Assembly: GCA_000320545.1 (NCBI GenBank) | Contig: ADNK01000555.1 | Coordinates: 33,335 to 97,334, forward strand | Origin: Bigelowiella natans CCMP2755 | Taxonomy: Eukaryota > Protista > Cercozoa | Reading direction: 5' to 3' | DNA: 64,000 nucleotides | Shown: positions 2,855 to 64,000 of the stretch, one piece after another | How the letters are laid out: every line of letters begins with the position of its first letter | Numbering within the stretch: the stretch's first letter is position 1 | Made by a program: the position numbers and the translations under genes | The notes under the pieces: generated by a model | Told to the model about the DNA's origin: nothing | What the model saw: the letters and a program-made list of their open reading frames with translations, nothing else | Database searches by the model: none

Positions 2855-3341
2855 GAAAGGTTGGGGCCGCAGACGTTTGATATTTGATCCATTTGAGTCC
2901 GTTGGTGCAGGCCCTGATCAGTGATCAATGTAACGCACAACGTGTTTTCATGTCGCTCTATGATAACGTCTTCATATTTCGTCCATGAACGTCATAACCT
3001 CTTTGTCGTTCTGTGTGAAAAGCTGAATTTTCGGAGGGAACGGGTTTGGTTTTCCGCTCGGCGGAACCGGTAAACACATTTAATTTTTCGCAACTGTTCC
3101 CTGATATCCCGTTGGTATTCCAGGTAGATCTATTCCATCGTTGTGAGGATGGGTACCTGCAAACGCCGCCGCAGCCACTGTGTGTTTTTGAAGGGATGTC
3201 GCACAGCATAAATTGAGGTGTTATTTCTCAATAAATATTAAATACAAAAATACCGGTACATCTTCGTGTTGTACGAGTACTGGCTACTGGATTTTTCCTG
3301 GAGTGTGTTGTGGTCTTTTTTCCTGACGTCTCTCCGCCGAG

Positions 3342-3698
3342 ATGGATGTTGGACCTGTGCTCTCGGCTACACTCCGAAGCGTTCTTCCATGGTATATTCT
3401 CTGGCTGGTCGACCACACTGTGGTTTTCTTTGTCCTCCTCGCGATCTCCGCGATGGTAGCAGTGCGCTTTTTAGCCAGCTATGCCAGTATGATGTACAGG
3501 GTGTTGGGGCTAGGAATCACCGTGGGGTTCATCGTAGCACATGTAGGAGCGATGTCGACGGCCTGGTTTGCGCTCGGTAAGGATGCAGGGGTTGTTCAGG
3601 TGGTAGGGACTCTCATAAAAGCGGCTACCCTGCCTACTCGACTATCTATACAAGTGATACTATCTCCATTCAGTTCAATTATTAGCACAGCAAGGTAA
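3342..3698 (+). CDS. Small hydrophobic multi-pass membrane protein (hypothetical)
   Basis: 118-aa ATG-initiated ORF with 2-3 hydrophobic segments (VVFFVLLAISAMVAV, VLGLGITVGFIVAHVGAM), divergent from the preceding gene. No family recognised. Confidence 0.4.
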   Translation: MDVGPVLSATLRSVLPWYILWLVDHTVVFFVLLAISAMVAVRFLASYASMMYRVLGLGITVGFIVAHVGAMSTAWFALGKDAGVVQVVGTLIKAATLPTRLSIQVILSPFSSIISTAR

Positions 3699-3810
3699 TC
3701 ATGAGAGATGTGTGGTGGTGAGAACGATGACGACAACGCCGAAAACGGCTGCGAATGAAAGCTTTTATATGATAAAGTAGACACATGAGTATGCACATAC
3801 TCATAGCTTT

Positions 3811-4250: not shown

Positions 4251-5669
4251 ATGTGGGTGAAATAAAACTGTGTCACCACTGCTACATACAAGAGCGCAAC
4301 TCACTGTCAACTTTCATCACGTGCAGTCCTCTAGAGCGGCACCTTTAGTTCTAGCAGTATGCGCTGAGATCGAGAATGGGGGTGAGTTACACACACACAC
4401 ACACTTCGAGACCATAAGTATTATCTATTTATCGCGTAATGTTTTGAATTTGTATTCCAACTCTCTAATTTCTGATTTTAAGTCGAACTGAAATTATTTT
4501 TGCATGATTAAGAGGATGTACTCGCATATTTGCGATAAATTACTTAGTCACCTCCAAGAAGTCATCCTCGATACAATATTCCTCCCCGAAATCTCGAATA
4601 AACTCTAGTGGCGCCGCAATAAAGGGGAACCAAAAGCCCAATGTACAAAAGATGTCAGCCGAATCTAAGGGGCAGCCAAGACCGCATTTATCAAGTGGAA
4701 ATAAGAGGACGACGACAAACACCGCAATACTTCCAAAAACCTTTATAAGCTTGATTCCCAAAATTCTCCCGGGCTTCGTTCTCACTTTGATAAGGATTGT
4801 TACCTCATTCATTAGAATAATAAGCACGCCATTATCATCACCACCTTCTCCAACTCATCATAGACTGTCTTTGCTATCGTTCAAGGGCTCATCAGCATCC
4901 TATCCGATTGAATCTTGTCATTGCCACAATACTTGCCCTTGCTCTGCATCCTATTCGGGATTTTGTCATACTTGGACTTGTACTAAGGTTTTTGGGTTTG
5001 GAGCTTTTTGTTGCCGTTGTGGATCATAATAAAATGATATAGATGACTATTTAGTGTAGAGATCAAGATTGTATGTATTAATCGACATCAAATGTGGCGA
5101 TGGCATGCTGAGCTACACTGTGGCTGTAGTATCTAAGCGAGCAAAGGCACGAAATATGGGCGCGCTGAATGCATCGTTGCCTCGCAATTTTGCAAATTGA
5201 TCGAGTCGCGCTTATTGACTGCAGAAATGTCCCAGCAACTGTGGCTCATGCCACGCCCGATGCATCCATCACATACCATGTGCATACGGCTTGTGTCGTC
5301 TAGGGTCTACTAGTCTAATCTACAACAATGAATACAGTGACATGCAACACATCAACTATTTTGCCACTGCTAGACTGTGCAGCATCATGCTAGCATGCAC
5401 GTCTTTCAAACCATCGATGATCTCAGATTTCATCACACACCGGGTAGCACAATGAGCAATCATATCACATCCATGTTTTTCTTCTAGCTAGTTCTGGACG
5501 GCACACCATGCAGGTACAACTAAGACAACTTCACGTTCGCAGTTGCACACACGCCACACATGCCACTGATCACCGCAACCATTTGTGCGCGAATGCTCGA
5601 AGCTTCCAAAATGCCCATATTCACCACGTGATGCTCACTGTCACAATCAAGTGCTACAATTGTTGCTAT

Positions 5670-5977
5670 TTGTTGATCATTGTCGACTCAAACAACACGA
5701 AGCGAAATCACCCATGCTAGCATGCAATCGTGAGCGATGAGAATTTGCAATTGACGACCCCACGTGCGAAGTGTTTGCTGCTGTGCACACATGCTGCCGT
5801 CATTGTCACGACACACACTAGACACACCAGATGATGTCGTGCATTGCCACCTTGTCACGATCAACGTGCAGCAAGTGAAATCACGTCAGTCCAACTGTGT
5901 GCATCACAACAATGCGAAGTCTGCATGAGGGTAGGGTTCACCACTTTTTGCCCATGACTTGCATGCACGGTGACACA

Positions 5978-6016
<39 letters not shown>

Positions 6017-6615
6017 CACAGACCAACACACGTGACATCCATCACACACACACGCCTAGACGCGCCCGCGCGCGCGAGGGAGCGTGCACGTGTGGGTGCA
6101 CTGACATGGTCGCGTTCATCAATTGCACTCCCTCCCAGCTCTGGAGACAGCACAGCTCTGTTGATTGCCTTGGCGATGCAACTTCTTCGTTCATCATGCA
6201 GAGCAAAAAACAATGGGAAAATTGGAAACGGGTTGCAATGCACGGCATCGCCAACTGATGATTGACACCACACAATTGTCTCACTTGAAGGCAAAAAAGA
6301 AGAGCTTGTCCAAAGCTTGCAATTGGCAAGAAAGAAGTTCCTCGTCTTGGAACGCAGCACCCCATCGAATCGCATGGTTCAGGATCAGCGATCCTGCTGC
6401 TGTTCACTGCTCCTTCAGTTCGCGCCGGGATTTGCATTTTGAGCGAACCTCATGCTAGCATGGGGTCAAAAGAGGAAACTAGGATTGCCAAATGGGGAAG
6501 AGCATGCACCTGTAGCAGTCCACCATGAGAGAATGATCCCTGTGCACACACCGTGAAGTGCAACGAGTTGCAAAACACAACCATTGAACATCGAACATTG
6601 AAAGAAGCATTGATC
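5670..6615. other. TpA-depleted (CA/TG-rich) intergenic island 1
   Basis: Hand count: 7 TA dinucleotides in about 945 bp (5 CTAG, 2 GTAG), none between about 6060 and 6455. CpG is abundant. Confidence 0.85.
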
Positions 6616-6974
6616 AACTAACTCACCCAGTCCATTTGAAATGTATTTCACTCTGGCAATTTTTTTACGTTTTTCCTAGGATGAATAAAATACAATAATA
6701 TTTGCCACAGATGATTGTTGTTTTGGTACTGTGGTGGTTGAAGCGGCATTTCGTGTTTTCAGTGGTTTCTTCTAGGTCAAAATTATGTTTATTATTCTCT
6801 TTTTTACATGGCTGACTACTCGTAATCAATCATCATTCGGAATCATCGGCACAATGGCTGCTTGCCTGAAGGACGACACAAGGAAATGATGTGTTAGTTT
6901 ACTTCCGTCCCCCCCAATCCAAAATTATCTTTAGTTAAGGCTTTCAGGAAAATAGTGCCCCGCTTCTCGTTCCG

Positions 6975-8917
6975 ATGGTGACTATCATTCGGTGGGCGAT
7001 GGGGTCTGCTTTTCTCTGGCTCATTACCGGCGTAGCTGCAGCACTCAACGAACATGATGCTGGAGGGCTCTCTTTGTCGCTAAAGCAATCGCTCAGGCTG
7101 CGTGGTGGGGGGCGCACGACTTACGTACGCCCCCTTCCGCACACGGGTCCAACTGTTGGGCTTGGGGGCGTTGATCCAAGCGACAATAGAGTGGTAGTTT
7201 TGGGATGAGAACAAAAATAATAGCAGAGATGTGCATTGCTTGACGAGAACTGTTGTGCAGTGCTGCTAAATTTCGCGTACCCTCCCATTCGCGTATGTAC
7301 GCGCGCGTCAATGTTTGTGCATGTGCATGTTTATGTGTGAGTGTGTGGGTGTGTCGGTGTGTTTCCGAGAGGAAGGGTGGGGGGGGAGGAGCGGTAGATA
7401 GACTCCTCCAATGATACAACCGGGCTTCATTTCTTCTAATTAATCTTATAAATTACAGCTTGGGTCGGATATTTGGAGAGTGCGAAAGACTTTCATACGA
7501 GACAACATGAGAGAAACACGGTCTACCTAACATTGATGCAGAGTGCTTCCATCCTTGCCTCATAAAACTTGTTTTTACTCATCCTATCTTGTTCAGCCCC
7601 CTCCCCGCAGTGAAAGTACTCTCCCTGCAGCTAGAAGAACCATGGTACATTGACGCTGATAAATAAATCGTGCATCCAGTAACGATGATGTTGAGTTGCT
7701 GCTCTTTCCTCCACAGTTTATAAAAACGATATGTTGTTGATTCGTAACACACAGGGGGTTGGAGCTAGAGCCGAGAGAAAGCAGCTTGGGAGCGGTGATT
7801 CCTGTGGCTTATGTGATGTGATTGCTGTCACTGATAAGTGAAGTGAATCATAGAGAAAGGATTCCACATGTAATGTGTTATATTCCCTGCGCAATTTTGT
7901 GTTGTTTAGATTGTGAAATCGATCGACCCAGCCGGCCAAGCCGCCAACTTCAAAAAGGTATAGAGTGGGGGTGTGGTTATGTATACTACATACATGCATT
8001 AATCGGTAATAATCTAAGAAGTTAGATGAAGTACAGTACTTAAGTAAAGAATCCACCCTAAAAGAATTTATGGGTCACCAATCGCCAGCCCCCGCCTAAA
8101 TACCTTTTCTTCTCCAGGTAAAAGTCGGTATGCATGTATTGTCAATAAATGGTGAGGATGTGAGGCTACGAGTGTGGACAAGCATCCAAAGGTTTCTTCA
8201 AGAAAAATAAACCCCATGATGTGTTTCTTTCGCGTCGAACAGACGATGATTATCATCGTAACGAACATGGCCATACGAATATCATTAGACACATTGACCG
8301 CTGCAAGGAGAAAGGTGGCGCTATTTCCTTTCAGCTGCTGGATCCGTCCTACGTCGCTGGTGGGGAAAAGGTCATCTCGCTGTCGTCGTCGTCTGTTACC
8401 AATTGTGTTTATTTGCATGGAACTATCGTGTAAGTATTATTCTTCAAAGTCATCGTCACCATCATCACCATCATCAAAGCAGATAAGGTTGCGGATGCGA
8501 AGGCCTTTGGGACTTGAGTTGGCGGAGGACACAAACCCGCAGATAAACAACAAACTTGTCGGCACAAAGGTGGTGGTGGTGGTAGGCAATAGCAACAGCA
8601 GCAGTAGCAGTAGTGGTGTGTATAATTTAGTGTGTGCTTATCATTATCATATTTCTGAATATCCTTCTGGAGAGGAGAAACTCATGCAACGCATCTATAT
8701 ACGTCCCCTCGTTTCTCCATCTTCTCTTCCCTGTACCACCCCTCTGTTGATGCACGTACTGTGTGGTGGATGCTCTCTGATGTCAGGTCGCTAGGCTGGT
8801 GAGTGGCGGAAGTGCTCTTTCACAAGGTATCACAACGGCGCTAGGAAGAACGATAATACGATAACAATGATAGTGATATTATCCTCAATTCAACTGGATG
8901 ATGCGTTTTTTTGTTTG

Positions 8918-38098: not shown

Positions 38099-39074
38099 TT
38101 ATTTCAAATCCATCGTGTTACAATTAGCTTGCACTCTTACATCACATATCCCATCATATTGGGAGCTGGTCCGATCCATTTGAGCTAATACGCAGCAACC
38201 ACAGCAACATCTAATAGACACAATTTAGACACAATTTATCACGTTGCAAGGTTCATTGCGAGAATTTTTTAGTTACACTGCACAGCAATCTCCGCACCCA
38301 TCTGGGTCGTATATGTTGTGCTTTCTTCTAAATCTCTGCCTGGGGAGTGTACATGATCATTGTTAATAAAGTTGTATTCATTTTTATTATGTACGAATTA
38401 ACCTTGTTCCCCACACAAAGCAACAAAGGAAAATGTTGACAATTGACGTTATGAAATATATAAGTTGGCCCAAAACGGGAATTCCAGCCGCCTGTGTCAA
38501 AATATGGAAGAAACATGCTAAGCCCTCAAGATTGCACGACAACATTAACGCCACTATATTTTTTTAGTTTGATTCTTACAACGAATCCAAACGTGTAGAG
38601 GACCCCAGGAATTGAAAACAGCGCACAATTTGGCCAGAATTTATCCTCTACGGAGCAGAAGCTTTTTCAACATAAAATATCTTTCAGTAACACCCCATAC
38701 CAAAATGTGTACTTATTGAATGAAGTACTCAAATCTTGAACACACTTCGGTTCCTTAATTCCTTCTATGGCACGAATCCGCGCAATGGTGAAACATGGAC
38801 AGCACCAAGCCATTAAACAAGAAGGAGCACATTGATCGCAGCAACTACATAGACTGGATTCCCAATGACGAAGCTGCTGCGCTTGCTGCTGTCCGACAGT
38901 AGTAGGAACGGCTACTATCACGGGCTGATGCACATGCTGTGCAATTTGTGGCTGGTGTAGGGCTGGAATTGGTTGTCCTACTGGCACTGGTTGAACCTCA
39001 ACTGGCATTGGTTGGGGCTGGAAAGCTTGAGTTGAGGCTGGTTGCTCCATCTCGGGAGCAGAGGGTTGCTGCAT
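38099..39074 (-). CDS. PLAC8-family Cys-rich membrane protein
   Basis: P/Q-rich N-terminus, WESSLCSCCDQCAPSCLMAWCCPCFTIARI, and later exons RQRFRRKHNIYDPDGCGDCCAV|CCCGCCVLAQMDR. The exact 3' end is uncertain. Confidence 0.85.
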
Positions 39075-39457
39075 CTCGATCGGTTGATTCTAAATTTTGC
39101 AAGCCAAAATCAACTAGTCAACGCGATGCGTACTTCAATCATGCATACATCGCATTTTAACTGTACAAAGTTAAAAGTTTTAAATTTAAACACTATTCCT
39201 ATTTCACCGCTCTGTAAACGAGCTCGACATTTAAAAGACTTCTACTGAATCCCTCCGCGTGGGTGTGAATGAAGATGCGAAGCTTACTTGTGAATCTGGT
39301 TTCATGTTTCTTGTAGCTTGCGAGTTTGAGAGCTTGGGCTCACGCTTGAAGAGGGTTGTGCTGCATGTATGCAGATAATCGCCCCTTTTCTAGATTTTTG
39401 CTCATGGAAATGAATGTCGTTTCTCAAAAATGTAGGGGGCTATTTTGTTATTTTCTA

Positions 39458-39697
39458 CGCAGTGTTCCGTGCAATGCCAAATTGAGTCCTTTGCGCTGAA
39501 GTGAGGTTCATTCTGGTGCAGGCTGTTGCGTCGACAGATTGGTCTTCGTGTTTCAATGCGGCTCAAAGGTGATGGTGGGCCCTGGAGACGAGTCAAGAGA
39601 ATGTGGTGGTCCGAAATTGGTCCGCGAATTCATGAAAACGAATTCATGGTCAAAATGATCCTGCTTGTGGAAATCAGAAACACACTCAACCCTTGAA
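39458..39697. other. TpA-free flank of retrotransposon copy 1 (left half of island 3)
   Basis: Zero TA dinucleotides in 240 bp up to the LTR edge (hand check). Confidence 0.85.
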
Positions 39698-40023
39698 TGT
39701 TGCGCGTAAGGTGTTCACAGGCCGAGGCGCTACGTGCACAAGTAGGCAGGGGGGGGGAAAGGCACGTTTGCTTCCTTTTGAAGAGTTGTGTTTATTTTTA
39801 TTAAAGATTATATTTTTATTAAATCGTGCACTGCGTAATCATTCGCGAAGCTTTCGCGAATGCCGCCGCACGTGGGGCAGCACACTTCCGGTGTGCTGCC
39901 ATGAGTCCCGCCGGAACCCACGTGCCTATGCTGTATTAATATCTACGTTATCTATATTCTATATCCGCGACAACCCCTTTGTTGTCGCACGTGACTTGTG
40001 CCCGCGTAGTGGTACGCGCTACA
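39698..40023 (-). repeat. 3' LTR of copy 1
   Basis: Sense strand TGTAGCGCGTA...TACGCGCAACA: an 11-bp terminal inverted repeat with 1 mismatch. Confidence 0.96.
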
Positions 40024-40066
40024 CCTCCCCCAAGTCACGTTGCTCCTTCCTTCCTTCCTTATTCCC
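40024..40066 (-). other. Polypurine tract region
   Basis: On the element sense strand GGGGGAGG directly abuts the 3' LTR, with AAGGAAGGAAGGAAGGAG 11 nt upstream of it. Confidence 0.75.
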
Positions 40067-40074
40067 TTAGACCT

Positions 40075-43000
40075 TCATCGCTTTCGGAACTTCACCAACC
40101 ACCAGGTAATAGATTCCTCTCTAACCTTATCTCCTTTGTCGCTTACCCAGAACTCACCTTCGTCCTTAGGTTCGTGTCCATACCAGCCCTCTGCATCAAG
40201 GTCCCCCAGGACCTTATACCAGTGCTCAAAGGGTAAGTCGGGAACAGCTAGGTAGAGTAGCTGATATTTTCCGTCCTTTATTTTCATAGCTACCCTCTCC
40301 ATATTTCGTAATCCAGGGTAGCCTAGATAGACAATCTTCATGCGCCAATCGTCGTTCACCCTGACCTTATTGTTTCCATATTCCACATCGAACTTAGGTC
40401 GGGGTCCTAAACAAGGCATTGCTCGCTCCCACACAGTAGGGTTTACTTTAACATCCTCTAGGAGCTTCTCACCGATATCATAATTCTTTAGGTGACTGAT
40501 GTGGCGCAAGGTGACCCTGTTCCCATCATAGATGTAGTACTGCTTCCTCCCCTTCCTCTCGGTAACCTTTGCAACGCCACCCCAGAAGGGGTCTTGTTTA
40601 TTTCTCGATCTCAGATTTACCTTGGCCCTAACATACTGTCCTTCCTTTAGAACTCGGCCATCGTACGGGACCTTCTCGTCTTCGCTCTCGGTATCGTCGT
40701 CGTTGTCGTCGCCTTCTTCCCTCTCCTTATCCTTGATACCTCCCCCAGACGTGAAGGTGTCGTTTACTAACCCTTGTATCTTGTCTGGTGTGGTGCTATT
40801 TATCCTGCTTAGGTTGGCCAAGGTGCGGTGGAGTCGCTCTACCTTGGAGTTGGACTGGGCATAGTATACAGGTGAGGCATCAATATTAGGGTGTGGTAGC
40901 TGTAGAAGAGAGGTCTCATTATCCACATGTAACTTCTTTGGTATCTTGTTTATGCTAACTTCATCAGGGATAGCCTGGAGCTCAGACTCCCAGGTACGGT
41001 AGCAGTTAGTAAGCCTCTGCTTATATAAGCCTTTGTTCTTCTTAGCAACGTTGACCTTGATAATCTTTTTAACCCAGCACTTTCCAGTGGCCACATCAAC
41101 GAAGGTAAGGTAGTGATAGCCATCGTACTTATAAACATCAATTTGCACGATATCTAAGAAGTTCCTTGCTTTGATTTTCTTAGATGCACGGCTCTTGCTG
41201 GACTCCTTGGTGGCGACGCCTGCCGCCTTCAAGCTGGAGCACCTGCAGCCACGCAGGTATGTCCTTATCTCTTTTAGCTTGTAGGGCCAGTAGTAATGGT
41301 AGAGTAGAGCAGTGATATGGTTTTCTCCTACGTGTGCAGGTCCATGGGCGGTAAAGAGAAGGGCTCCCCTGGTCCGCCGTGGCACGTAGGTACGCCTAAC
41401 ATTATTAGTGTATACATATATCCTATCACTAAGTACCTCATGCTTGTGTTTGTATTTATCCAGGTGTTCTTGAAGGTGCTGGAGCTCCTCTGGCTCAGGC
41501 AGGAAGTCGCCGTCCTCGAAGGTAATCGCGTTAACCATAGGGGTGACCTGGGTAGGGACTTTCTTTTCGAACAGCCTGCTGAAATAGTCAGCAAGCTGCT
41601 TGTCTCCTGGTGCGTAGACCACTGTCCTCTTGTCCCTAAACTCTTCCGTGTCCGCCCTCATAGCTGCATACTCATCGTTAGGCGCTTCGAGCTTGCGGTC
41701 GATGCCTAGGAGGGGCTTGTGGTCAGTCATTAAGGTGAAGCTGGGCACCGACAGCAGGTAGTATCTTAGTTTCCTCTGCGCCTCAGTCATGGCTTTATAC
41801 TCTCCTTTTGTAGGGCTGTACTTGGCCTCAGCTGCTGTGCAGGCCCTGCCCCACACCCGTATGATCTGCTGGTCTTGGGTAAGTACAGCAGCCATACCTA
41901 GCTTAGACCAGTCTGTCCATAGGGTAGCTGGTCTAGTAGTGTCTAGCTTAGCATTCAATAGGGTGTTGCTGCATAACTTTATTAGGTTATCGAAGTGGGC
42001 ATCAAGGCCAGCCTTGGCCCACACCTTAGCGAAGCTGAGGCCTACAGAGTTCTCCTTCCGGTAAGCAGTAGTAAAAGCAGCTGCAGTCCTAGCGTAGGTA
42101 GGGGAGAACCTACGTAGTATCCAAGCTGCAGTCTGCAAGAATGACTTTAACTCCTTTGCATTCTTAGGTTTAGGGGCTTGCTGTAGTGCTGCTACTTTCT
42201 CGGGGTTTGGGGTGATGCGGCCTTGCTCCAGGTAATATCCACACCACTTGATTCTTGTAGCTAGGAATGTACACTTCTGCAGTCTAATAGTAAAACCGAA
42301 GTGTGCAAACCTAATAAATATATTTTCCAGGAGGAAGATCTGAGCGACGACTGTGTTGGTACATATTATGTCATCATCCACATACACAAACACAAACACC
42401 CACAACACAGACGCCATCCCATCATGTGTGTATGCCCTGTAGTTCTGACTACTGAACGCATCCCCTGATATGCTTAGGCCGTAAGGGAATACGACGAAGT
42501 GCCACTTCCTGTGCCTGCTGGAGAACGCAGTAATGGGGCGGGAGGTTTTGTGGATGGGTGTCTGCATGTATGATTCATTTTTATCTAGGGAAGAGTAGTA
42601 TTTGTATCCTATGACGTGTTCAATAACGTCATCTATCCTTGGTGTAGGTGTCTGGATCCTCTTTATTACTCGGTTGTGGCGGATGAAGTTGTGCGCCAGG
42701 CGGAAGAAAGGGTAAGTAGGTTTCTTAGCTAGCACATGTCTCACGTTCCATGGTGAGTTGCTTGGCTCTATCTTCCCTTCCTTTGCCCATTCATTGATCT
42801 GCCACTCTATCTTTTCCCAGTCCGCTTCCGGTCGCCTATGTTCTGGGTCATTGATGATGCACTCTTCGTATCCCTTCTTTAGCTCGATCTTTACTGGGGT
42901 AAGCTTGCTGGAGGGCTTCGTCGTCGGCTTGGTGATGTCAGAGTACTTCTCGTTTAATATTTTATTAATGTACTTTTTGCCTTTGTCGATATCCCAATCA

Positions 43001-45048
43001 TCAGCTGGGGGGGTCTTGTCCAGTAGCTCCGTTATCTGTCGGATGGTCTTGCCGGGGTTCTTCTTCCGTAGCTCGGTAGGTGTAGGTAGCTTGTTGTCCG
43101 CTAGGTCCATAAACTCTAACGCATTAACGCTTGACTCAGAGGTCCACTCGTCAAGCCGTATCATGTTCTGGCTGATGGTCCTGCCTGACTTCTTTGGCAA
43201 CTTAGCAAAGTATATCTTGTGATTGTAGAATGATATGATCCCCCCTAATTTTTCTAGGGCATCCTGTCCGAGGAGTAGTTCCATGGATAAAGTCATGGCT
43301 ACTCGGGTCTTGATTTGGGTCTCCGCGTCGCTGCCAGGTATCTGTAGCTTTAGCATTAGCTCACCGACGGTCTTCATGGAAGAGCTTCCGTCTGCTTGAG
43401 CATATTTACGTTCTTTCTTAGTCACTTGATCCAATAGTCCTAACCTTCTTACTGTGCTTAGGCTTATGAAGGACTTCGGCATGCTGCCACTATCCCAAAG
43501 GGCAGGTAGTTTCTTGTAGTCTCCGTAGCTGTCTTTAACTTTAACCTTGGTCATAGCAACTTTGATAGTCCTGTTAGCGTCTTCGTCATTAATGTTGCAT
43601 ACTCCTAAGTTCTTTATGTCGTCTAGGGTCATGGGCTTGTCTTGGTCCTGCGTTGCTGGTACTGCTGTCTTCGTCGGCGCCTGCTTAAGGTGATCTAATA
43701 TTCCGTTTATCTGCTGCTGTATAGCATTGATACTGTTCTGCTTTTTGTTCTTATATTTATTGTTCTTCCCGTTGTTGCTGCCTTGCCATTTGCTGTTGTT
43801 ATATCCTTGTCCTCTGCCTTTCTTTCTCTTTAACTTCTCGTAGTGTTCGTTGAGCTGCCTGATCGTCATCCTGGGTCGTCCTTCTTTCCTGTCTCTGCAG
43901 TCTTTAGCGGTGTGTTTCCCTTTACGTGAGCAGTATCCGCAACGTCGGTTACCTTCCCTGTCCTTGTACCAGTTTCGCTGCGGCTTAATAGCGTTAATGT
44001 TTCCTATGCCAGGTACCTTAGGGCTGGTAAACTTGCGGTCCTGCTCCTGCTCGCGTAGGGATATAGCCTGCACTGCTGCCTCCATCGTGGTGTAGCCTTT
44101 CTCCGTAACGTAAGTGGATTCCTTTATCTTTAACTTGAACTCTTCAAACCTTGCCTGATCATCACCTGTGTTGTAATTAAAATCATGTAGTTCGTCGATC
44201 ATATCCTGGAAGCGCGTGGCAAAGTCTCTAACAGGTTCTCTCTCATGCTGCATCATTGCTCTGTATTTTCTAATAGCCTGGGGTAGGGAGTTAGCATCCT
44301 GTTCATTTACAAAAGCCTTCATTATCGCCTCAACGTCTCGTAGCCCACTAACTGTAGTGTGTATTTTCTCTAGCTGCCTGATCCGGGTCCTGCCTGTCTC
44401 GTAAAGGTCCATGGCTTGCTTTATTATAGCTAGCCATTTGAGCTTGTCGTTTTCGGTGGGGTTAGGGGTAAAGTCGCAGAGTATACTCCTAGCGTTCTTC
44501 CACCACCTCCTTGCCTCACCTCTTTTCCCGTTGTATTTCGTTATCATAACCGGTGCTGTTTTAACAGACATGAACTGGGTGTTCCGCTGTACCGGCTGCT
44601 GCTGCTTGACGGTGCTCTGGGTCGTCCCCCGCGAGGCGCCCAGACCCCCGTCGTTCCTAAACAAAGCTGCCCACTCTGGAGGTAAGTCTGCTTCGTAATC
44701 CATGATGTCCTGCATGATAGCTGCCCAAACATCATGTGTCTGATACTTGTATTCTATCGATACTTTCAGTTTGGCGTAGTTGCTCGCCCTGGGTCGCAAG
44801 GCTCGTAATGCCATTACGACCTTCTTGCTTTCGGCGGCCACGTCCTCGTCGTCCGCCTCGTAGAAGTTCTCCAGTGCCTCTGCTGCTGCATCTGCTTTCT
44901 TAATCCCGGGTGCTGGTCCCGGCGGTGCCTGTGGAGGTGTTCCTCCTCCTTCCTTAGCGTCCGTATCGCCCTTCCTTTCCTGTTTCTGCTCGTGCCCTTG
45001 CACGGCCTGCGAGCCAAAGTCCTGCTGTTCTTCTAGCTGCTGTGACAT
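40075..45048 (-). CDS. Gag-Pol polyprotein (1657 aa): Gag, zinc knuckle, aspartic protease, RT, RNase H, integrase, extra C-terminal domain
   Basis: CGYCSRKGKHTAKDC knuckle (43897-43941), ALWDSGS protease, SSLDKNESY/FPYGL/YVDD RT, WTDWS...TDHKPL...ADYFSR RNase H, H-H-C-C, QID/HVDN/KVERL integrase, and an SH3-like GQYV...FWGG...HISHLK module. Uninterrupted. Confidence 0.97.
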   Translation of the reverse strand: MSQQLEEQQDFGSQAVQGHEQKQERKGDTDAKEGGGTPPQAPPGPAPGIKKADAAAEALENFYEADDEDVAAESKKVVMALRALRPRASNYAKLKVSIEYKYQTHDVWAAIMQDIMDYEADLPPEWAALFRNDGGLGASRGTTQSTVKQQQPVQRNTQFMSVKTAPVMITKYNGKRGEARRWWKNARSILCDFTPNPTENDKLKWLAIIKQAMDLYETGRTRIRQLEKIHTTVSGLRDVEAIMKAFVNEQDANSLPQAIRKYRAMMQHEREPVRDFATRFQDMIDELHDFNYNTGDDQARFEEFKLKIKESTYVTEKGYTTMEAAVQAISLREQEQDRKFTSPKVPGIGNINAIKPQRNWYKDREGNRRCGYCSRKGKHTAKDCRDRKEGRPRMTIRQLNEHYEKLKRKKGRGQGYNNSKWQGSNNGKNNKYKNKKQNSINAIQQQINGILDHLKQAPTKTAVPATQDQDKPMTLDDIKNLGVCNINDEDANRTIKVAMTKVKVKDSYGDYKKLPALWDSGSMPKSFISLSTVRRLGLLDQVTKKERKYAQADGSSSMKTVGELMLKLQIPGSDAETQIKTRVAMTLSMELLLGQDALEKLGGIISFYNHKIYFAKLPKKSGRTISQNMIRLDEWTSESSVNALEFMDLADNKLPTPTELRKKNPGKTIRQITELLDKTPPADDWDIDKGKKYINKILNEKYSDITKPTTKPSSKLTPVKIELKKGYEECIINDPEHRRPEADWEKIEWQINEWAKEGKIEPSNSPWNVRHVLAKKPTYPFFRLAHNFIRHNRVIKRIQTPTPRIDDVIEHVIGYKYYSSLDKNESYMQTPIHKTSRPITAFSSRHRKWHFVVFPYGLSISGDAFSSQNYRAYTHDGMASVLWVFVFVYVDDDIICTNTVVAQIFLLENIFIRFAHFGFTIRLQKCTFLATRIKWCGYYLEQGRITPNPEKVAALQQAPKPKNAKELKSFLQTAAWILRRFSPTYARTAAAFTTAYRKENSVGLSFAKVWAKAGLDAHFDNLIKLCSNTLLNAKLDTTRPATLWTDWSKLGMAAVLTQDQQIIRVWGRACTAAEAKYSPTKGEYKAMTEAQRKLRYYLLSVPSFTLMTDHKPLLGIDRKLEAPNDEYAAMRADTEEFRDKRTVVYAPGDKQLADYFSRLFEKKVPTQVTPMVNAITFEDGDFLPEPEELQHLQEHLDKYKHKHEVLSDRIYVYTNNVRRTYVPRRTRGALLFTAHGPAHVGENHITALLYHYYWPYKLKEIRTYLRGCRCSSLKAAGVATKESSKSRASKKIKARNFLDIVQIDVYKYDGYHYLTFVDVATGKCWVKKIIKVNVAKKNKGLYKQRLTNCYRTWESELQAIPDEVSINKIPKKLHVDNETSLLQLPHPNIDASPVYYAQSNSKVERLHRTLANLSRINSTTPDKIQGLVNDTFTSGGGIKDKEREEGDDNDDDTESEDEKVPYDGRVLKEGQYVRAKVNLRSRNKQDPFWGGVAKVTERKGRKQYYIYDGNRVTLRHISHLKNYDIGEKLLEDVKVNPTVWERAMPCLGPRPKFDVEYGNNKVRVNDDWRMKIVYLGYPGLRNMERVAMKIKDGKYQLLYLAVPDLPFEHWYKVLGDLDAEGWYGHEPKDEGEFWVSDKGDKVREESITWWLVKFRKR

Positions 45049-45064
45049 TGTTAGTCAAATCGTT

Positions 45065-45082
45065 TCCCGTGTGTGGAAGCCA
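45065..45082 (-). other. Candidate tRNA primer-binding site of copy 1 (also 61258-61275 in copy 2)
   Basis: TGGCTTCCACACACGGGA starts 5 nt after the 5' LTR. Its complement ends in ...GGAAG-CCA like a tRNA 3' end. It is not the iMet PBS. Confidence 0.6.
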
Positions 45083-45087
45083 AAGGT

Positions 45088-45413
45088 TGTTGCGCGTAAG
45101 GTGTTCACAGGCCGAGGCGCTACGTGCACAAGTAGGCAGGGGGGGGGAAAGGCACGTTTGCTTCCTTTTGAAGAGTTGTGTTTATTTTTATTAAAGATTA
45201 TATTTTTATTAAATCGTGCACTGCGTAATCATTCGCGAAGCTTTCGCGAATGCCGCCGCACGTGGGGCAGCACACTTCCGGTGTGCTGCCATGAGTCCCG
45301 CCGGAACCCACGTGCCTATGCTGTATTAATATCTACGTTATCTATATTCTATATCCGCGACAACCCCTTTGTTGTCGCACGTGACTTGTGCCCGCGTAGT
45401 GGTACGCGCTACA
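45088..45413 (-). repeat. 5' LTR of copy 1
   Basis: Identical by eye to 39698-40023 and, in reverse complement, to 60927-61252. Confidence 0.96.
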
Positions 45414-46030
45414 TGAAGTTGCACTCGCAAGCTCAAGCACAGCTAGCATGTTCACTCCAACCAGAGGGACCACAGCTAGCACAGGGGGGTTCATGATGAA
45501 GCCTCATGTGGAGGAGACTCAGAACTGCAGGTTTGCCAAACGACAAGCCAACTGGCCCCATTCTTTTCACGTGGAAATGCGAACCATTGTTGGGTCCTTT
45601 CTGCGTGTTTGTTGGCCGAGAAACGCACGCTCGTGCACACGTGCTCAAGTGCGCGCATCGCACTGACTTGTGGAGTCACAATGCACACACATCAAATGCA
45701 TGCACTGCCACGCGTGACATTCAGTGTGAAATCATTGACAAGTGGCACCACACACGAAGCGTGCTAGCGAGTGCAGCTGCCATGATGCAGCGCACGCACT
45801 GAACATCTAGCTAGATGTGCGTGTGCGTGCACAAGCTCGCGACCAGCGATGCAAAACCGCAATGGATGCAAATTGTGTGCAATCGCATCCAGTTTTTGCA
45901 ATGTTGATGCTTTTGATCGCTGCATGCATACTGCTAGATGTGCACACATTCGTTTCAACGTTGCTGCCATTGGACACCGCTAGACCGTCCAATGAGCGTC
46001 GAGTGCCGTGTGGACTCGAGCAGGTGATGT
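45414..46030. other. TpA-depleted flank of copy 1 (right half of island 3)
   Basis: Hand count: 8 TA in about 617 bp, 7 of them CTAG. Confidence 0.85.
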
Positions 46031-60689: not shown

Positions 60690-60926
60690 TGGCAAATCAC
60701 AGTGTTGTGTGGGCCAGCATGTGGCCCTCTAGACCTTTCATGGCACATTCCATGTTAGCTAGTTAGCCCACTCATTGTGCACACGCATGAATGCAAGTGC
60801 AACGTGACAAGCCATCATGGCTGAATGTTTTTGGCAGCAAGCGCACACGTCAACATGCGTCTTGTCAGCTGCTGGCCATGATGCACCATCACGGCCGACT
60901 TGTCTGCGCGGCCAGCTCCAGAGCTC
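60690..60926. other. TpA-depleted flank of retrotransposon copy 2 (island 4)
   Basis: Four TA, all followed by G (2 CTAG, 2 TTAG). None in the last 160 bp before the LTR. Confidence 0.8.
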
Positions 60927-63900
60927 TGTAGCGCGTACCACTACGCGGGCACAAGTCACGTGCGACAACAAAGGGGTTGTCGCGGATATAGAATATAGAT
61001 AACGTAGATATTAATACAGCATAGGCACGTGGGTTCCGGCGGGACTCATGGCAGCACACCGGAAGTGTGCTGCCCCACGTGCGGCGGCATTCGCGAAAGC
61101 TTCGCGAATGATTACGCAGTGCACGATTTAATAAAAATATAATCTTTAATAAAAATAAACACAACTCTTCAAAAGGAAGCAAACGTGCCTTTCCCCCCCC
61201 CTGCCTACTTGTGCACGTAGCGCCTCGGCCTGTGAACACCTTACGCGCAACAACCTTTGGCTTCCACACACGGGAAACGATTTGACTAACAATGTCACAG
61301 CAGCTAGAAGAACAGCAGGACTTTGGCTCGCAGGCCGTGCAAGGGCACGAGCAGAAACAGGAAAGGAAGGGCGATACGGACGCTAAGGAAGGAGGAGGAA
61401 CACCTCCACAGGCACCGCCGGGACCAGCACCCGGGATTAAGAAAGCAGATGCAGCAGCAGAGGCACTGGAGAACTTCTACGAGGCGGACGACGAGGACGT
61501 GGCCGCCGAAAGCAAGAAGGTCGTAATGGCATTACGAGCCTTGCGACCCAGGGCGAGCAACTACGCCAAACTGAAAGTATCGATAGAATACAAGTATCAG
61601 ACACATGATGTTTGGGCAGCTATCATGCAGGACATCATGGATTACGAAGCAGACTTACCTCCAGAGTGGGCAGCTTTGTTTAGGAACGACGGGGGTCTGG
61701 GCGCCTCGCGGGGGACGACCCAGAGCACCGTCAAGCAGCAGCAGCCGGTACAGCGGAACACCCAGTTCATGTCTGTTAAAACAGCACCGGTTATGATAAC
61801 GAAATACAACGGGAAAAGAGGTGAGGCAAGGAGGTGGTGGAAGAACGCTAGGAGTATACTCTGCGACTTTACCCCTAACCCCACCGAAAACGACAAGCTC
61901 AAATGGCTAGCTATAATAAAGCAAGCCATGGACCTTTACGAGACAGGCAGGACCCGGATCAGGCAGCTAGAGAAAATACACACTACAGTTAGTGGGCTAC
62001 GAGACGTTGAGGCGATAATGAAGGCTTTTGTAAATGAACAGGATGCTAACTCCCTACCCCAGGCTATTAGAAAATACAGAGCAATGATGCAGCATGAGAG
62101 AGAACCTGTTAGAGACTTTGCCACGCGCTTCCAGGATATGATCGACGAACTACATGATTTTAATTACAACACAGGTGATGATCAGGCAAGGTTTGAAGAG
62201 TTCAAGTTAAAGATAAAGGAATCCACTTACGTTACGGAGAAAGGCTACACCACGATGGAGGCAGCAGTGCAGGCTATATCCCTACGCGAGCAGGAGCAGG
62301 ACCGCAAGTTTACCAGCCCTAAGGTACCTGGCATAGGAAACATTAACGCTATTAAGCCGCAGCGAGACTGGTACAAGGACAGGGAAGGTAACCGACGTTG
62401 CGGATACTGCTCACGTAAAGGGAAACACACCGCTAAAGACTGCAGAGACAGGAAAGAAGGACGACCCAGGATGACGATCAGGCAGCTCAACGAACACTAC
62501 GAGAAGTTAAAGAGAAAGAAAGGCAGAGGACAAGGATATAACAACAGCAAATGGCAAGGCAGCAACAACGGGAAGAACAATAAATATAAGAACAAAAAGC
62601 AGAACAGTATCAATGCTATACAGCAGCAGATAAACGGAATATTAGATCACCTTAAGCAGGCGCCGACGAAGACAGCAGTACCAGCAACGCAGGACCAAGA
62701 CAAGCCCATGACCCTAGACGACATAAAGAACTTAGGAGTATGCAACATTAATGACGAAGACGCTAACAGGACTATCAAAGTTGCTATGACCAAGGTTAAA
62801 GTTAAAGACAGCTACGGAGACTACAAGAAACTACCTGCCCTTTGGGATAGTGGCAGCATGCCGAAGTCCTTCATAAGCCTAAGCACAGTAAGAAGGTTAG
62901 GACTATTGGATCAAGTGACTAAGAAAGAACGTAAATATGCTCAAGCAGACGGAAGCTCTTCCATGAAGACCGTCGGTGAGCTAATGCTAAAGCTACAGAT
63001 ACCTGGCAGCGACGCGGAGACCCAAATCAAGACCCGAGTAGCCATGACTTTATCCATGGAACTACTCCTCGGACAGGATGCCCTAGAAAAATTAGGGGGG
63101 ATCATATCATTCTACAATCACAAGATATACTTTGCTAAGTTGCCAAAGAAGTCAGGCAGGACCATCAGCCAGAACATGATACGGCTTGACGAGTGGACCT
63201 CTGAGTCAAGCGTTAATGCGTTAGAGTTTATGGACCTAGCGGACAACAAGCTACCTACACCTACCGAGCTACGGAAGAAGAACCCCGGCAAGACCATCCG
63301 ACAGATAACGGAGCTACTGGACAAGACCCCCCCAGCTGATGATTGGGATATCGACAAAGGCAAAAAGTACATTAATAAAATATTAAACGAGAAGTACTCT
63401 GACATCACCAAGCCGACGACGAAGCCCTCCAGCAAGCTTACCCCAGTAAAGATCGAGCTAAAGAAGGGATACGAAGAGTGCATCATCAATGACCCAGAAC
63501 ATAGGCGACCGGAAGCGGACTGGGAAAAGATAGAGTGGCAGATCAATGAATGGGCAAAGGAAGGGAAGATAGAGCCAAGCAACTCACCATGGAACGTGAG
63601 ACATGTGCTAGCTAAGAAACCTACTTACCCTTTCTTCCGCCTGGCGCACAACTTCATCCGCCACAACCGAGTAATAAAGAGGATCCAGACACCTACACCA
63701 AGGATAGATGACGTTATTGAACACGTCATAGGATACAAATACTACTCTTCCCTAGATAAAAATGAATCATACATGCAGACACCCATCCACAAAACCTCCC
63801 GCCCCATTACCGCGTTCTCCAGCAGGCACAGGAAGTGGCACTTCGTCGTATTCCCTTACGGCCTAAGCATATCAGGGGATGCGTTCAGTAGTCAGAACTA

Positions 63901-64000
63901 CAGGGCATACACACATGATGGGATGGCGTCTGTGTTGTGGGTGTTTGTGTTTGTGTATGTGGATGATGACATAATATGTACCAACACAGTCGTCGCTCAG
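60927..64000 (+). mobile_element. Ty3/Gypsy LTR retrotransposon, copy 2 (5' part, truncated by the window edge)
   Basis: 5' LTR at 60927-61252, the same leader, and gag-pol from ATG 61292. Reverse-complement near-identical to copy 1. Confidence 0.96.
61292..64000 (+). CDS. Gag-Pol polyprotein of copy 2 (partial, open to the edge, through RT YVDD)
   Basis: MSQQLEEQQDFGSQ start, same frame as copy 1. YVDD at about 63956-63967. Absent from the ORF track, presumably because it has no stop in the window. Confidence 0.95.
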   Translation, partial: MSQQLEEQQDFGSQAVQGHEQKQERKGDTDAKEGGGTPPQAPPGPAPGIKKADAAAEALENFYEADDEDVAAESKKVVMALRALRPRASNYAKLKVSIEYKYQTHDVWAAIMQDIMDYEADLPPEWAALFRNDGGLGASRGTTQSTVKQQQPVQRNTQFMSVKTAPVMITKYNGKRGEARRWWKNARSILCDFTPNPTENDKLKWLAIIKQAMDLYETGRTRIRQLEKIHTTVSGLRDVEAIMKAFVNEQDANSLPQAIRKYRAMMQHEREPVRDFATRFQDMIDELHDFNYNTGDDQARFEEFKLKIKESTYVTEKGYTTMEAAVQAISLREQEQDRKFTSPKVPGIGNINAIKPQRDWYKDREGNRRCGYCSRKGKHTAKDCRDRKEGRPRMTIRQLNEHYEKLKRKKGRGQGYNNSKWQGSNNGKNNKYKNKKQNSINAIQQQINGILDHLKQAPTKTAVPATQDQDKPMTLDDIKNLGVCNINDEDANRTIKVAMTKVKVKDSYGDYKKLPALWDSGSMPKSFISLSTVRRLGLLDQVTKKERKYAQADGSSSMKTVGELMLKLQIPGSDAETQIKTRVAMTLSMELLLGQDALEKLGGIISFYNHKIYFAKLPKKSGRTISQNMIRLDEWTSESSVNALEFMDLADNKLPTPTELRKKNPGKTIRQITELLDKTPPADDWDIDKGKKYINKILNEKYSDITKPTTKPSSKLTPVKIELKKGYEECIINDPEHRRPEADWEKIEWQINEWAKEGKIEPSNSPWNVRHVLAKKPTYPFFRLAHNFIRHNRVIKRIQTPTPRIDDVIEHVIGYKYYSSLDKNESYMQTPIHKTSRPITAFSSRHRKWHFVVFPYGLSISGDAFSSQNYRAYTHDGMASVLWVFVFVYVDDDIICTNTVVAQ

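What the first reader, a model, noticed from the sequence alone, without database searches (positions are those of the whole stretch)
39458..46030. Both young retrotransposons inserted inside TpA-erased islands
Seen: removing copy 1 rejoins a 240-bp TA-free left flank and a right flank with 8 TA (7 CTAG) into one island of about 850 bp. Copy 2 is preceded by 160 TA-free bases. The elements themselves are TA-rich and intact, with identical LTRs, so the islands predate insertion. Islands are only a few percent of the window. Inference: integration is targeted to, or only tolerated in, the chromatin where TA erasure occurs.
Basis: partly seen in the sequence, partly recalled or inferred. Interest (0 to 1): 0.82.

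Follow-up and report, generated by a model that had tools for sequence, protein, structure and literature searches.

The report
Retrotransposon lands in TA-erased islands
In the alga Bigelowiella natans, a very young jumping-gene family of about 300 near-identical copies sits mostly inside small DNA patches where an already published mutation process has erased nearly every TA, so the element appears to choose this already-mutated DNA when it inserts.

Summary
Copy 1 (39698-45413, minus strand) has 326-bp identical LTRs, a TGAA target duplication and an intact 1657-aa gag-pol. It splits a roughly 750-bp TA-poor island. Copy 2's flank is a weaker case: 161 TA-free bases.

I fetched 40 further, independent insertions from the same genome.
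- TA observed/expected is 0.36 at the insertion point and 0.75-0.8 beyond 1 kb.
- 21 of 40 sites fall under the published genome-wide 5% TA cut-off (p = 2.5e-17).
- 26 of 40 qualify once CTAG, which the erasure spares, is set aside. Background is 2-6%.

The copies are at least 99.8% identical, TA-rich, and show no TA-biased changes, so the islands came first. Two older relatives in the same genome encode no tyrosine at all (Y became H or C), so this clade does get erased with age.

The TA erasure itself was published in a 2026 preprint, and this scan had noted such islands before on other DNA. The link to integration is new.

My best reading (0.6) is target choice at integration. The cue is unknown. 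Three unlabelled ChIP runs showed no island-wide mark. GCTAGC motifs are about 9-fold enriched beside insertions. The integrase ends in a Dam-like domain that lacks the catalytic motif.

The parts
39457..39697 (.). Left part of the TA-erased island split by copy 1 (no TA in 240 bp).
39694..39697 (+). Target-site duplication TGAA, left copy. The right copy is at 45414-45417.
   Evidence: read directly
39698..40023 (-). 3' LTR of copy 1: 326 bp, TG...CA ends, 24 TA. A purine tract (GGGGGAGG on the coding strand) abuts it at 40024-40031.
40075..45048 (-). Intact gag-pol ORF of 1657 aa: CCHC knuckle, aspartic protease, RT (YVDD), RNase H, integrase H2C2 finger and core.
40477..40677 (-). SH3-like integrase C-terminal domain (pol residues about 1458-1524).
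   Evidence: AF2 model with alignment A1, pLDDT 92.8. Best match is the PFV integrase CTD, Z 8.1.
40078..40470 (-). Last domain of the polyprotein (pol residues about 1527-1657). It has a small Rossmann-like fold resembling the phage/DIRS Dam family PF05869. GYPG stands where Dam has NPPY. This is the candidate targeting module.
   Evidence: No Pfam hit by sequence.
45088..45413 (-). 5' LTR of copy 1, identical to the 3' LTR.
45414..45928 (.). Right part of the island (HMM call).
38667..39074 (-). First exon of a PLAC8-family host gene. Its ATG lies 383 bp from the island edge, so the island and the element sit just upstream of a gene start.
   Evidence: PF04749, E 8.9e-07
60764..60926 (.). 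TA-free run upstream of copy 2. Short, and not an island by the HMM.
60927..64000 (+). Copy 2 of the same family, cut by the window end. 5' LTR at 60927-61252.
5522..6618 (.). Insertion-free TA-erased island, single-copy in the genome, used as a control. It contains two GCTAGC motifs. It lies upstream of a probable gene start at about 6975.

Best explanation
A very recently amplified Ty3/gypsy-like LTR retrotransposon family of Bigelowiella natans chooses pre-existing TpA-erased islands as its integration target. The family has about 300 copies, at least 99.8% identical.

What the islands are: stretches of 0.5 to more than 3 kb in which the published TpA>TpG/CpA hypermutation has run to completion.

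Shown:
- The islands came first.
- The element inserts into them with an ordinary 4-bp duplication.
- About two thirds of insertions are there, although such DNA is only 2-6% of the sequence sampled.

Inferred:
- The bias arises at the integration step, through a tether, rather than by later loss of other insertions.
- The cue is something the islands share beyond any one sequence. It may be a chromatin state, or DNA features such as the surviving GCTAGC/CTAG motifs.
- The best candidate reader is the conserved Dam-like domain that ends the integrase, at the position where chromoviruses carry a chromodomain.

Older relatives of the element have themselves been erased. The family is therefore a substrate of the mutator over time, and the present copies are simply too young or not yet recognised.
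For: - Family size and youth: 626 exact matches to the LTR 5' end in the genome. All 40 scored LTRs are 100% identical. All 40 fetched copies are 99.6-100% identical over their main alignments, apart from one 1.7-kb segment at 98% in L019.
- Real integrations: perfect 4-bp duplications in 17 of 20 full-length copies.
- Metaprofile over 60 flanks: TA o/e is 0.36 in the first 100 bp and rises to 0.75-0.8 beyond 1 kb. TG+CA o/e falls from 1.6 to 1.2.
- HMM: 15 of 20 full-length and 6 of 20 one-flank sites are inside an island. Every island found in 133 kb of flanks contains the insertion point.
- 21 of 40 sites fall under the published 5% cut-off (p = 2.5e-17). Window background is 1 of 50 (Fisher p = 1.3e-8).
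- 26 of 40 qualify when CTAG is exempted, against 2.4-5.7% of background. Even if islands were 15% of permissible DNA, p = 1e-12.
- Flanks are not homologous to each other or to the element. Some islands are single-copy and others are old repeats. The target is therefore a class of DNA, not one sequence.
- Islands predate insertion. The LTRs carry 24 TA each, some within 3-16 bp of the junction, untouched beside fully erased DNA. Only 7 of 62 substitutions among copies are TA>TG/CA.
- The clade is erased with age. B. natans paralogues P0016 and P0026 have 0 Tyr in 1243 and 670 aa. Young-copy Tyr aligns to H or C in 24 of 49 and 14 of 31 positions. A homologue from a metagenome contig of unknown host (P0032) keeps Y or F.
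- The C-terminal module is conserved in more than 40 proteins, and the longer ones scanned are retroelement polyproteins. It folds confidently.
Against: - No direct evidence for a tether or a chromatin mark. Three ChIP runs of unknown antibody show no island-wide enrichment on the one insertion-free island tested.
- About a quarter of insertions (10 of 40) are in ordinary TA-normal DNA.
- A reference genome shows only surviving insertions, so selection cannot be excluded.
- Background was limited to the window and distal flanks, about 115 kb, plus the published quantile.
- Only the first 100 of 626 LTR places were listed, so the sample is about 13% of the family.
- The Dam-like assignment is by fold only (TM 0.46/0.60, Z 6.5-6.8).
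Confidence: 0.6

Rival explanations
1. Integration is random or only weakly biased, and purifying selection has removed insertions elsewhere. The erased islands are simply the DNA where a 5.7-kb element is tolerated.
For: - Only surviving insertions are visible in a reference genome.
- B. natans is gene-dense, with about 21,700 genes in about 95 Mb (preprint 10.64898/2026.01.13.699255).
- Islands are likely dead DNA.
- Some gene models are chimeric with element sequence, which shows that insertions near genes exist.
Against: - Islands are 2-6% of the sequence sampled, while ordinary intergenic and intronic DNA is far more abundant. DNA 1-2 kb from the same insertions is TA-normal yet unoccupied.
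- Even if islands were 15% of permissible DNA, 26 of 40 gives p = 1e-12.
- Copies inside and outside islands are equally young, so there is no sign of gradual purging.
- Two islands lie directly upstream of gene starts. That is not an obviously harmless place.
Confidence: 0.15
2. The element targets some other recurrent feature, for example particular gene-upstream regions, as Tf1 does. The islands are scars of earlier mobile or foreign DNA that landed at the same hot spots and was then erased. On this reading the link to TA erasure is indirect.
For: - The copy-1 island is 383 bp upstream of a PLAC8 gene ATG.
- The insertion-free island abuts a promoter-like ChIP double peak and a probable gene start.
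- The L011 island consists of repeats, and two of their other genomic copies lie next to copies of the erased relative family.
- Part of the L006 island is a family of about 30 copies.
- Insertions are oriented non-randomly relative to the island. The island extends further on the 5'-LTR side in 12 of 15 cases (p = 0.035).
Against: - Insertion points are inside the erased DNA on both sides in 15 of 20 cases, not merely near it.
- About half the islands tested are single-copy, with no recognisable mobile-element protein.
- Most gene starts in the window have no island.
Confidence: 0.15
3. The integrase recognises DNA itself rather than chromatin. The cue would be either the GCTAGC/CTAG-rich sequence near the sites or the TG/CA-rich, TA-free composition, which is more GC-rich and may favour nucleosomes. 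This is a variant of targeting with a different cue.
For: - GCTAGC density is 3.3-3.7 per kb in the first 200 bp, against 0.39-0.44 per kb in the background.
- GCTAGC lies within 70 bp at 13 of 40 sites, against 1.6-2.5 expected (p between 3e-9 and 6e-7).
- The enrichment is strongest at sites outside HMM islands: 4.7 per kb.
- The motif is mostly on the 5'-LTR side: 11 of 33 flanks against 3 of 27.
- The integrase ends in a fold related to sequence-specific adenine methyltransferases.
- TGCA is the commonest duplication, at 6 of 42 sites.
Against: - There is no fixed spacing between motif and insertion point.
- Many island sites have no GCTAGC within 400 bp.
- 22 GCTAGC motifs in the window background carry no insertion.
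- The target-site logo shows no consensus.
Confidence: 0.3
4. The element induces TA erasure of its flanks after insertion, so the islands are a consequence and not a target.
For: TA depletion is deepest at the junction and decays with distance.
Against: - LTR TAs 3, 10 and 16 bp from the junction are intact in all copies, beside flanks with 0 TA in 200-2000 bp.
- Equally young copies sit in normal DNA.
- Islands are strongly asymmetric, and several run beyond the 2 kb fetched on one side.
- Insertion-free islands exist.
Confidence: 0.03

Closest known systems
TpA>TpG/CpA hypermutation of integrated foreign DNA in B. natans (Mettrop et al., bioRxiv 10.64898/2026.01.13.699255)
   Same: The islands have the same signature: TA depletion with CA+TG gain, in regional clusters. 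The preprint found reverse transcriptase and DDE domains enriched among TA-depleted genes. The erased relatives P0016 and P0026 fit that pattern.
   Different: The preprint does not mention LTR elements, integration sites, CTAG sparing or GCTAGC. Here the point is that a live retrotransposon family inserts into the finished islands and is itself still unmutated.
Chromoviruses and Ty5: LTR retrotransposons tethered to heterochromatin by an integrase C-terminal module (established knowledge)
   Same: An extra conserved domain follows the integrase SH3-like domain. Insertions accumulate in silent or relic DNA rather than in genes.
   Different: There is no chromodomain. The domain has a Dam-like fold. 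No heterochromatin mark has been shown on the islands. Two islands lie next to gene starts.
DAM-LTRs: Ty3/gypsy elements carrying a DIRS-derived adenine methyltransferase domain (Fernandez-Moreno et al., bioRxiv 10.64898/2026.05.21.726589)
   Same: A Ty3/gypsy-like element carries a small Dam-type fold. The nearest structural neighbours are a PF05869 cluster and a retroelement cluster with reverse transcriptase and Dam domains (possibly DIRS-like).
   Different: Those domains keep the Asn-Pro-Pro catalytic triplet and are detected by sequence. This clade has Tyr-Pro-Gly there and gets no Pfam hit. Rhizaria and Bigelowiella are not mentioned in that paper. The domain here is terminal, after the integrase.
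Site-directed retrotransposons that follow a bound host factor (Ty3/TFIIIB, Ty1/Pol III, Tf1/Sap1, Dictyostelium DGLT-A/TRE; established knowledge)
   Same: There is a strong regional preference with a loose local sequence, a suggestion of fixed orientation relative to the target, and a motif enriched on one side.
   Different: There are no tRNA genes within 2 kb of any of the 40 sites. The host factor, if any, is unknown.
RIP-degenerated transposon nests in fungi and piRNA-cluster 'trap' loci in animals (established knowledge)
   Same: New insertions pile into DNA already inactivated by a genome-defence process.
   Different: The mutational chemistry is different (A>G at TpA rather than C>T). 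The islands are small, often single-copy and gene-proximal. No small-RNA link is known.

Membership tests
Ty3/gypsy-type LTR retrotransposon | Direct LTRs with TG...CA ends, flanked by a short target-site duplication | tested here: met
   The LTRs are 326 bp and identical, with a TGAA duplication. A 4-bp duplication is present in 17 of 20 other copies.
Ty3/gypsy-type LTR retrotransposon | Domain order gag, protease, RT, RNase H, integrase | tested here: met
   Pfam matches: gag-asp_proteas at 513-599, RVT_1 at 798-939, RT_RNaseH at 1036-1118 and Integrase_H2C2 at 1222-1269. The integrase core is not detected by Pfam.
Ty3/gypsy-type LTR retrotransposon | Polypurine tract next to the 3' LTR and a tRNA primer-binding site after the 5' LTR | tested here: inconclusive
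   A purine tract abuts the 3' LTR. No clear TGG-type primer-binding site is visible after the 5' LTR.
Chromovirus | Chromodomain at the integrase C-terminus | tested here: not met
   There is no Chromo hit. The terminal domain is Rossmann-like.
DAM-LTR (Fernandez-Moreno 2026) | Dam (PF05869-type) domain in the polyprotein | tested here: inconclusive
   The match is by fold only: TM 0.46 by query and 0.60 by target to a 100% PF05869 cluster, and Z 6.5-6.8 to PCIF1 and KsgA. No Pfam hit in any of the 28 aligned members, even at E <= 5.
DAM-LTR (Fernandez-Moreno 2026) | Conserved Asn-Pro-Pro-aromatic catalytic motif | tested here: not met
   My reading of alignment A1 places V-W-x-G-Y-P-G at the equivalent position. 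Pro139 and Gly140 are nearly invariant, and no member has N/D-P-P. The motif definition comes from the preprint.
TpA-hypermutated island (Mettrop 2026) | rho(TpA) <= 0.43 together with rho(CpA+TpG) >= 1.52 in 1 kb | tested here: met
   The rejoined copy-1 site gives 0.29 and 1.57. Among the 40 other sites, 21 meet the TA cut-off and 10 meet both.
TpA-hypermutated island (Mettrop 2026) | Derived from foreign or mobile DNA | tested here: inconclusive
   The L011 island and part of the L006 island are repeats. The copy-1 island, island A, L008 and most of L002 are single-copy. Ten long island ORFs have no Pfam domain.
tRNA-gene-targeting retrotransposons | Insertions within a fixed short distance of tRNA genes | tested here: not met
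   ARAGORN finds no tRNA gene in any of the 40 loci.

The most novel reading that the evidence does not exclude
The retrotransposon homes specifically to DNA that the host's TpA mutator has already processed. It would do so by reading a persistent cue of those islands, such as the spared GCTAGC/CTAG sites, a protein or adenine mark on them, or the mutator's own chromatin flag. Two consequences are possible. The element may be exploiting 'burnt ground' as a safe haven. Alternatively, the islands may act as traps that draw in new copies and later feed them to the mutator, as happened to the tyrosine-free older relatives.
Probability: 0.25. Interest if true: 0.85.

Novelty: new variant of a known kind. 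Interest (0 to 1): 0.68.

Why it matters
The TpA hypermutation of B. natans was reported only in 2026, and its targeting logic is unknown. A live, roughly 300-copy retrotransposon that lands two times in three in the few percent of DNA already erased gives a second, independent read-out of whatever marks those regions.

It also raises the question of whether a mobile element evades a mutational genome defence or is captured by it. That question can be tested at once with data that already exist:
- the 15 sequenced mutation-accumulation lines;
- the published histone ChIP maps;
- long-read 6mA calls.

Finally, it suggests a possible function, target choice, for a degenerate member of the adenine-methyltransferase domains recently found in many retrotransposons. 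That function is still open.

Tried and rejected
- Random control loci. I planned to fetch sites around a random 11-mer. Background therefore rests on the window, the distal flanks and the published 5% quantile. I did not try to get the letters another way.
- The look-up of encoding contigs with the polyprotein found nothing on record.
- Protein atlas search by features for the C-terminal 218 aa gave no usable hit.
- A single-sequence AlphaFold model was useless, at pLDDT 36.
- A profile search of PDB sequences returned only SH3-like ribosomal L21 noise.
- A word-based protein search of the C-terminus found only B. natans gene models.
- tRNA targeting is rejected.
- Islands as relics of this same family is rejected. 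There is no DNA or protein similarity of flanks to the element, other than a neighbouring young copy in L014.
- Ten long ORFs in the largest islands have no Pfam domain.
- A shared target sequence is rejected. All-against-all flank BLAST finds only microsatellites and short low-complexity matches, and the site logo is flat. The apparent 45-bp repeat beside the L002 insertion is a purine-rich simple repeat.
- TA-biased decay of the young copies was not seen: 7 of 62 changes.
- ChIP test of island chromatin. The antibodies are unknown, there is no island-wide signal, and run X20 (a related organism) laid no contigs. The result is inconclusive, and I obtained no empty-site evidence.
- Variant polarity among copies was judged by allele counts only.


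Full report
**Identity of the DNA**

Earlier notes of this scan place the window in Bigelowiella natans. My protein search confirms it: the element's C-terminus matches JGI Bigna1 gene models at 100%. The window is G000:C3182:33335-97334.

**The observation**

- Copy 1 is a 5716-bp LTR retrotransposon at 39698-45413 on the minus strand. It has identical 326-bp LTRs, a TGAA target duplication and an open 1657-aa gag-pol frame.
- Its left flank has no TA for 240 bp. Its right flank has 8 TA in 617 bp, 7 of them in CTAG.
- With the elements removed, a two-state HMM calls one island of 752 bp across the junction. It calls only one other island in the window, at 5522-6618.
- Copy 2 starts at 60927 on the plus strand and follows a 165-bp TA-free gap. 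That is only borderline by itself.
- The window has four TA-free gaps of 150 bp or more, against 0.13 expected under a first-order Markov model.

**What is already known**

A 2026 preprint (10.64898/2026.01.13.699255) showed by mutation accumulation that B. natans hypermutates TpA to TpG/CpA in two integrated viral regions. It also found that the genome holds clusters of TA-depleted, CA+TG-enriched windows. [quoted passage not shown] It does not mention LTR elements or integration sites. This scan had already noted such islands on other DNA of this genome. The new question here is only whether the retrotransposon prefers them.

**Test on independent insertions**

The family is large and very young.
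- There are 626 exact matches to the LTR 5' end.
- The 40 best LTR matches are all 100% identical.

I fetched 20 full-length copies with 2 kb of DNA on each side, and 20 copies with one flank. All copies are 99.6-100% identical to copy 1 over their main alignments, apart from one 1.7-kb segment at 98% in L019. Their flanks are unrelated to each other. 17 of the 20 full-length copies have perfect 4-bp duplications.

| Measure | At or near the insertion | Comparison |
|---|---|---|
| TA observed/expected, 60 flanks | 0.36 in the first 100 bp | 0.75-0.8 beyond 1 kb |
| TG+CA observed/expected | 1.6 | 1.2 |
| HMM island contains the site | 15 of 20 full-length, 6 of 20 one-flank | no island in the flanks lies away from a site |
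| Rejoined 1-kb site with rho(TpA) <= 0.43 | 21 of 40 (binomial p = 2.5e-17 against 5%) | 1 of 50 window windows (Fisher p = 1.3e-8) |
| Non-CTAG TA o/e <= 0.35 in 600 bp | 26 of 40 | 2.4% window, 5.7% window plus distal flanks (p = 5e-23) |

CTAG is exempted in the last row because the erasure spares it. Four more sites are intermediate, and ten are normal DNA.

**Order of events**

- The element is TA-rich: observed/expected is 1.13, with 24 TA per LTR, some only 3-16 bp from the junction.
- Those TAs are intact in every copy, beside flanks that have lost all of theirs.
- Among 62 polarised substitutions between copies, only 7 are TA>TG/CA.
- Islands are often asymmetric. Five extend over the full 2 kb fetched on one side.
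- An island without any insertion exists, and it is single-copy.

Erasure therefore came before insertion. It was not induced by the element.

Two other B. natans gene models belong to diverged relatives: P0016 (Bigna1 67480) and P0026 (70820). They are 27-41% identical to the young polyprotein and have the same C-terminal module.
- They contain no tyrosine in 1243 and 670 residues, while His and Cys are doubled or tripled.
- Where the young element has Tyr, P0016 has His 13 times and Cys 11 times. P0026 has His 8 times and Cys 6 times.
- A homologue from a metagenome contig of unknown host (P0032) keeps Tyr or Phe.
- Five genomic loci match P0016 at 78-100% identity, and the only stops in them are TGA.

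Older members of the clade have therefore been fully TA-erased, as predicted.

**What the islands are**

They are heterogeneous.
- The copy-1 island, island A, L008 and most of L002 are single-copy.
- L011 and part of L006 are old repeat families. Two of the other genomic copies of the L011 repeats lie next to copies of the erased relative family.
- Long island ORFs carry no Pfam domain.
- No tRNA gene lies near any site.
- The copy-1 island starts 383 bp upstream of a PLAC8 gene ATG.
- Island A abuts a probable gene start.

**The cue**

I laid three 2026 ChIP-seq runs of unknown antibody on island A with its surroundings.
- Two runs show a double peak at 6100-7300. It overlaps only the right third of the island and continues into TA-rich DNA, like a mark of an active gene start.
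- The third run is flat.

This neither supports nor excludes a special island chromatin. A separate preprint reports one H3K9me3+H3K27me3 heterochromatin state on B. natans transposons (10.1101/2025.03.17.643675). I could not link it to the islands.

On the DNA side, GCTAGC is about 9-fold enriched within 200 bp of insertion points.
- It lies within 70 bp at 13 of 40 sites, against about 2 expected.
- It is enriched also at sites outside islands.
- It lies mainly on the 5'-LTR side.
- Islands also extend further on that side in 12 of 15 cases (p = 0.035).

**The candidate reader**

The last 218 residues of the polyprotein are conserved in more than 40 proteins, and the longer ones scanned are retroelement polyproteins. 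With that alignment, AlphaFold gives pLDDT 92.8.
- The first half is the usual SH3-like integrase C-terminal domain. Its best match is PFV integrase, Z 8.1.
- The second half is a small Rossmann-like domain. Its nearest neighbours are a PF05869 Dam cluster (TM 0.46/0.60), a retroelement cluster with reverse transcriptase and Dam domains (possibly DIRS-like), and the adenine methyltransferases PCIF1 and KsgA.
- There is no sequence-level Pfam match.
- By my reading of the alignment, GYPG stands where Dam domains keep Asn-Pro-Pro-aromatic.

'DAM-LTRs' were described in May 2026 without any rhizarian example. This clade looks like a degenerate, probably non-catalytic relative. That it serves as the targeting module is my inference from its position and conservation. 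Nothing here tests it.

**Verdict**

The association is established for this sample. That the islands came first is well supported. I prefer targeting at integration (0.6) over selection alone (0.15), because ordinary non-coding DNA vastly outnumbers islands and lies unoccupied within 1-2 kb of the same sites. Only de novo insertions can settle it. The nature of the cue is open.

Noticed in passing
islands in L001-L040 and window 45414-46030, 5522-6618: The erasure spares CTAG. Of the 138 TA left in 26.5 kb of island DNA, 64 are in CTAG. CTAG density is 63% of background, while other NTAN contexts are at 0-16%. Survival fits a multiplicative rule on the base 3' of the adenine: TAG is much more resistant than TAC or TAA, which are more resistant than TAT.
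   Followed up: partly
within 200 bp of insertion points, e.g. window 45441-45446 and 45474-45479; L024, L028, L038 junctions: GCTAGC, (AGCT)n and CATGCTAGCATG-like palindromes are about 9-fold enriched next to insertions. They are mostly on the 5'-LTR side, and they also occur at sites that are not TA-erased. I have no explanation for why islands and sites are rich in this motif.
   Followed up: partly
proteins P0016 (G000:C3553:2081-6886) and P0026: These are annotated B. natans 'genes' that are TA-erased retrotransposon polyproteins. They have no tyrosine, and their frames stay open only because TAA and TAG cannot occur (an open frame of 1606 aa at C3553).
   Followed up: yes
window 40078-40470 (-): The integrase ends in a Dam-like fold without the NPP catalytic triplet.
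   Followed up: yes
window 6592: A C/T difference at a CpG is seen in roughly 40-70% of reads, by run, in all three 2026 ChIP runs. It is either a polymorphism or a culture difference from the 2012 reference, and it is not a TpA change.
   Followed up: no
window 6100-7300 and 3300-3700: There are sharp ChIP peaks in runs X21 and X22, up to 8-fold over neighbouring bins, with a dip at 6700-6900. They look like marks of active gene starts. The antibodies are unknown.
   Followed up: no
G000:C1160:4064-4226 and G000:C2844:25450-25526: Short stretches of insertion flank occur a second time on other contigs. One is 162 bp of the copy-1 right flank at 98% identity. The other is 77 bp of the L002 flank at 100%, placed (by coordinate inference) next to another copy of the element. 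They may be redundant assembly, or repeated insertion beside the same simple repeat.
   Followed up: no
L014, L034, L019: L014 has two young copies about 900 bp apart. L034 has an inverted LTR fragment inside a copy. The first 1.7 kb of L019 is only 98% identical, mostly through transversions, as if recombined with a sister subfamily.
   Followed up: no
proteins P0005, P0007, P0008: Some JGI gene models fuse host domains (PF10520, WW, others) to the element's integrase C-terminus. This shows that insertions within or next to genes have been annotated as chimeric genes.
   Followed up: no
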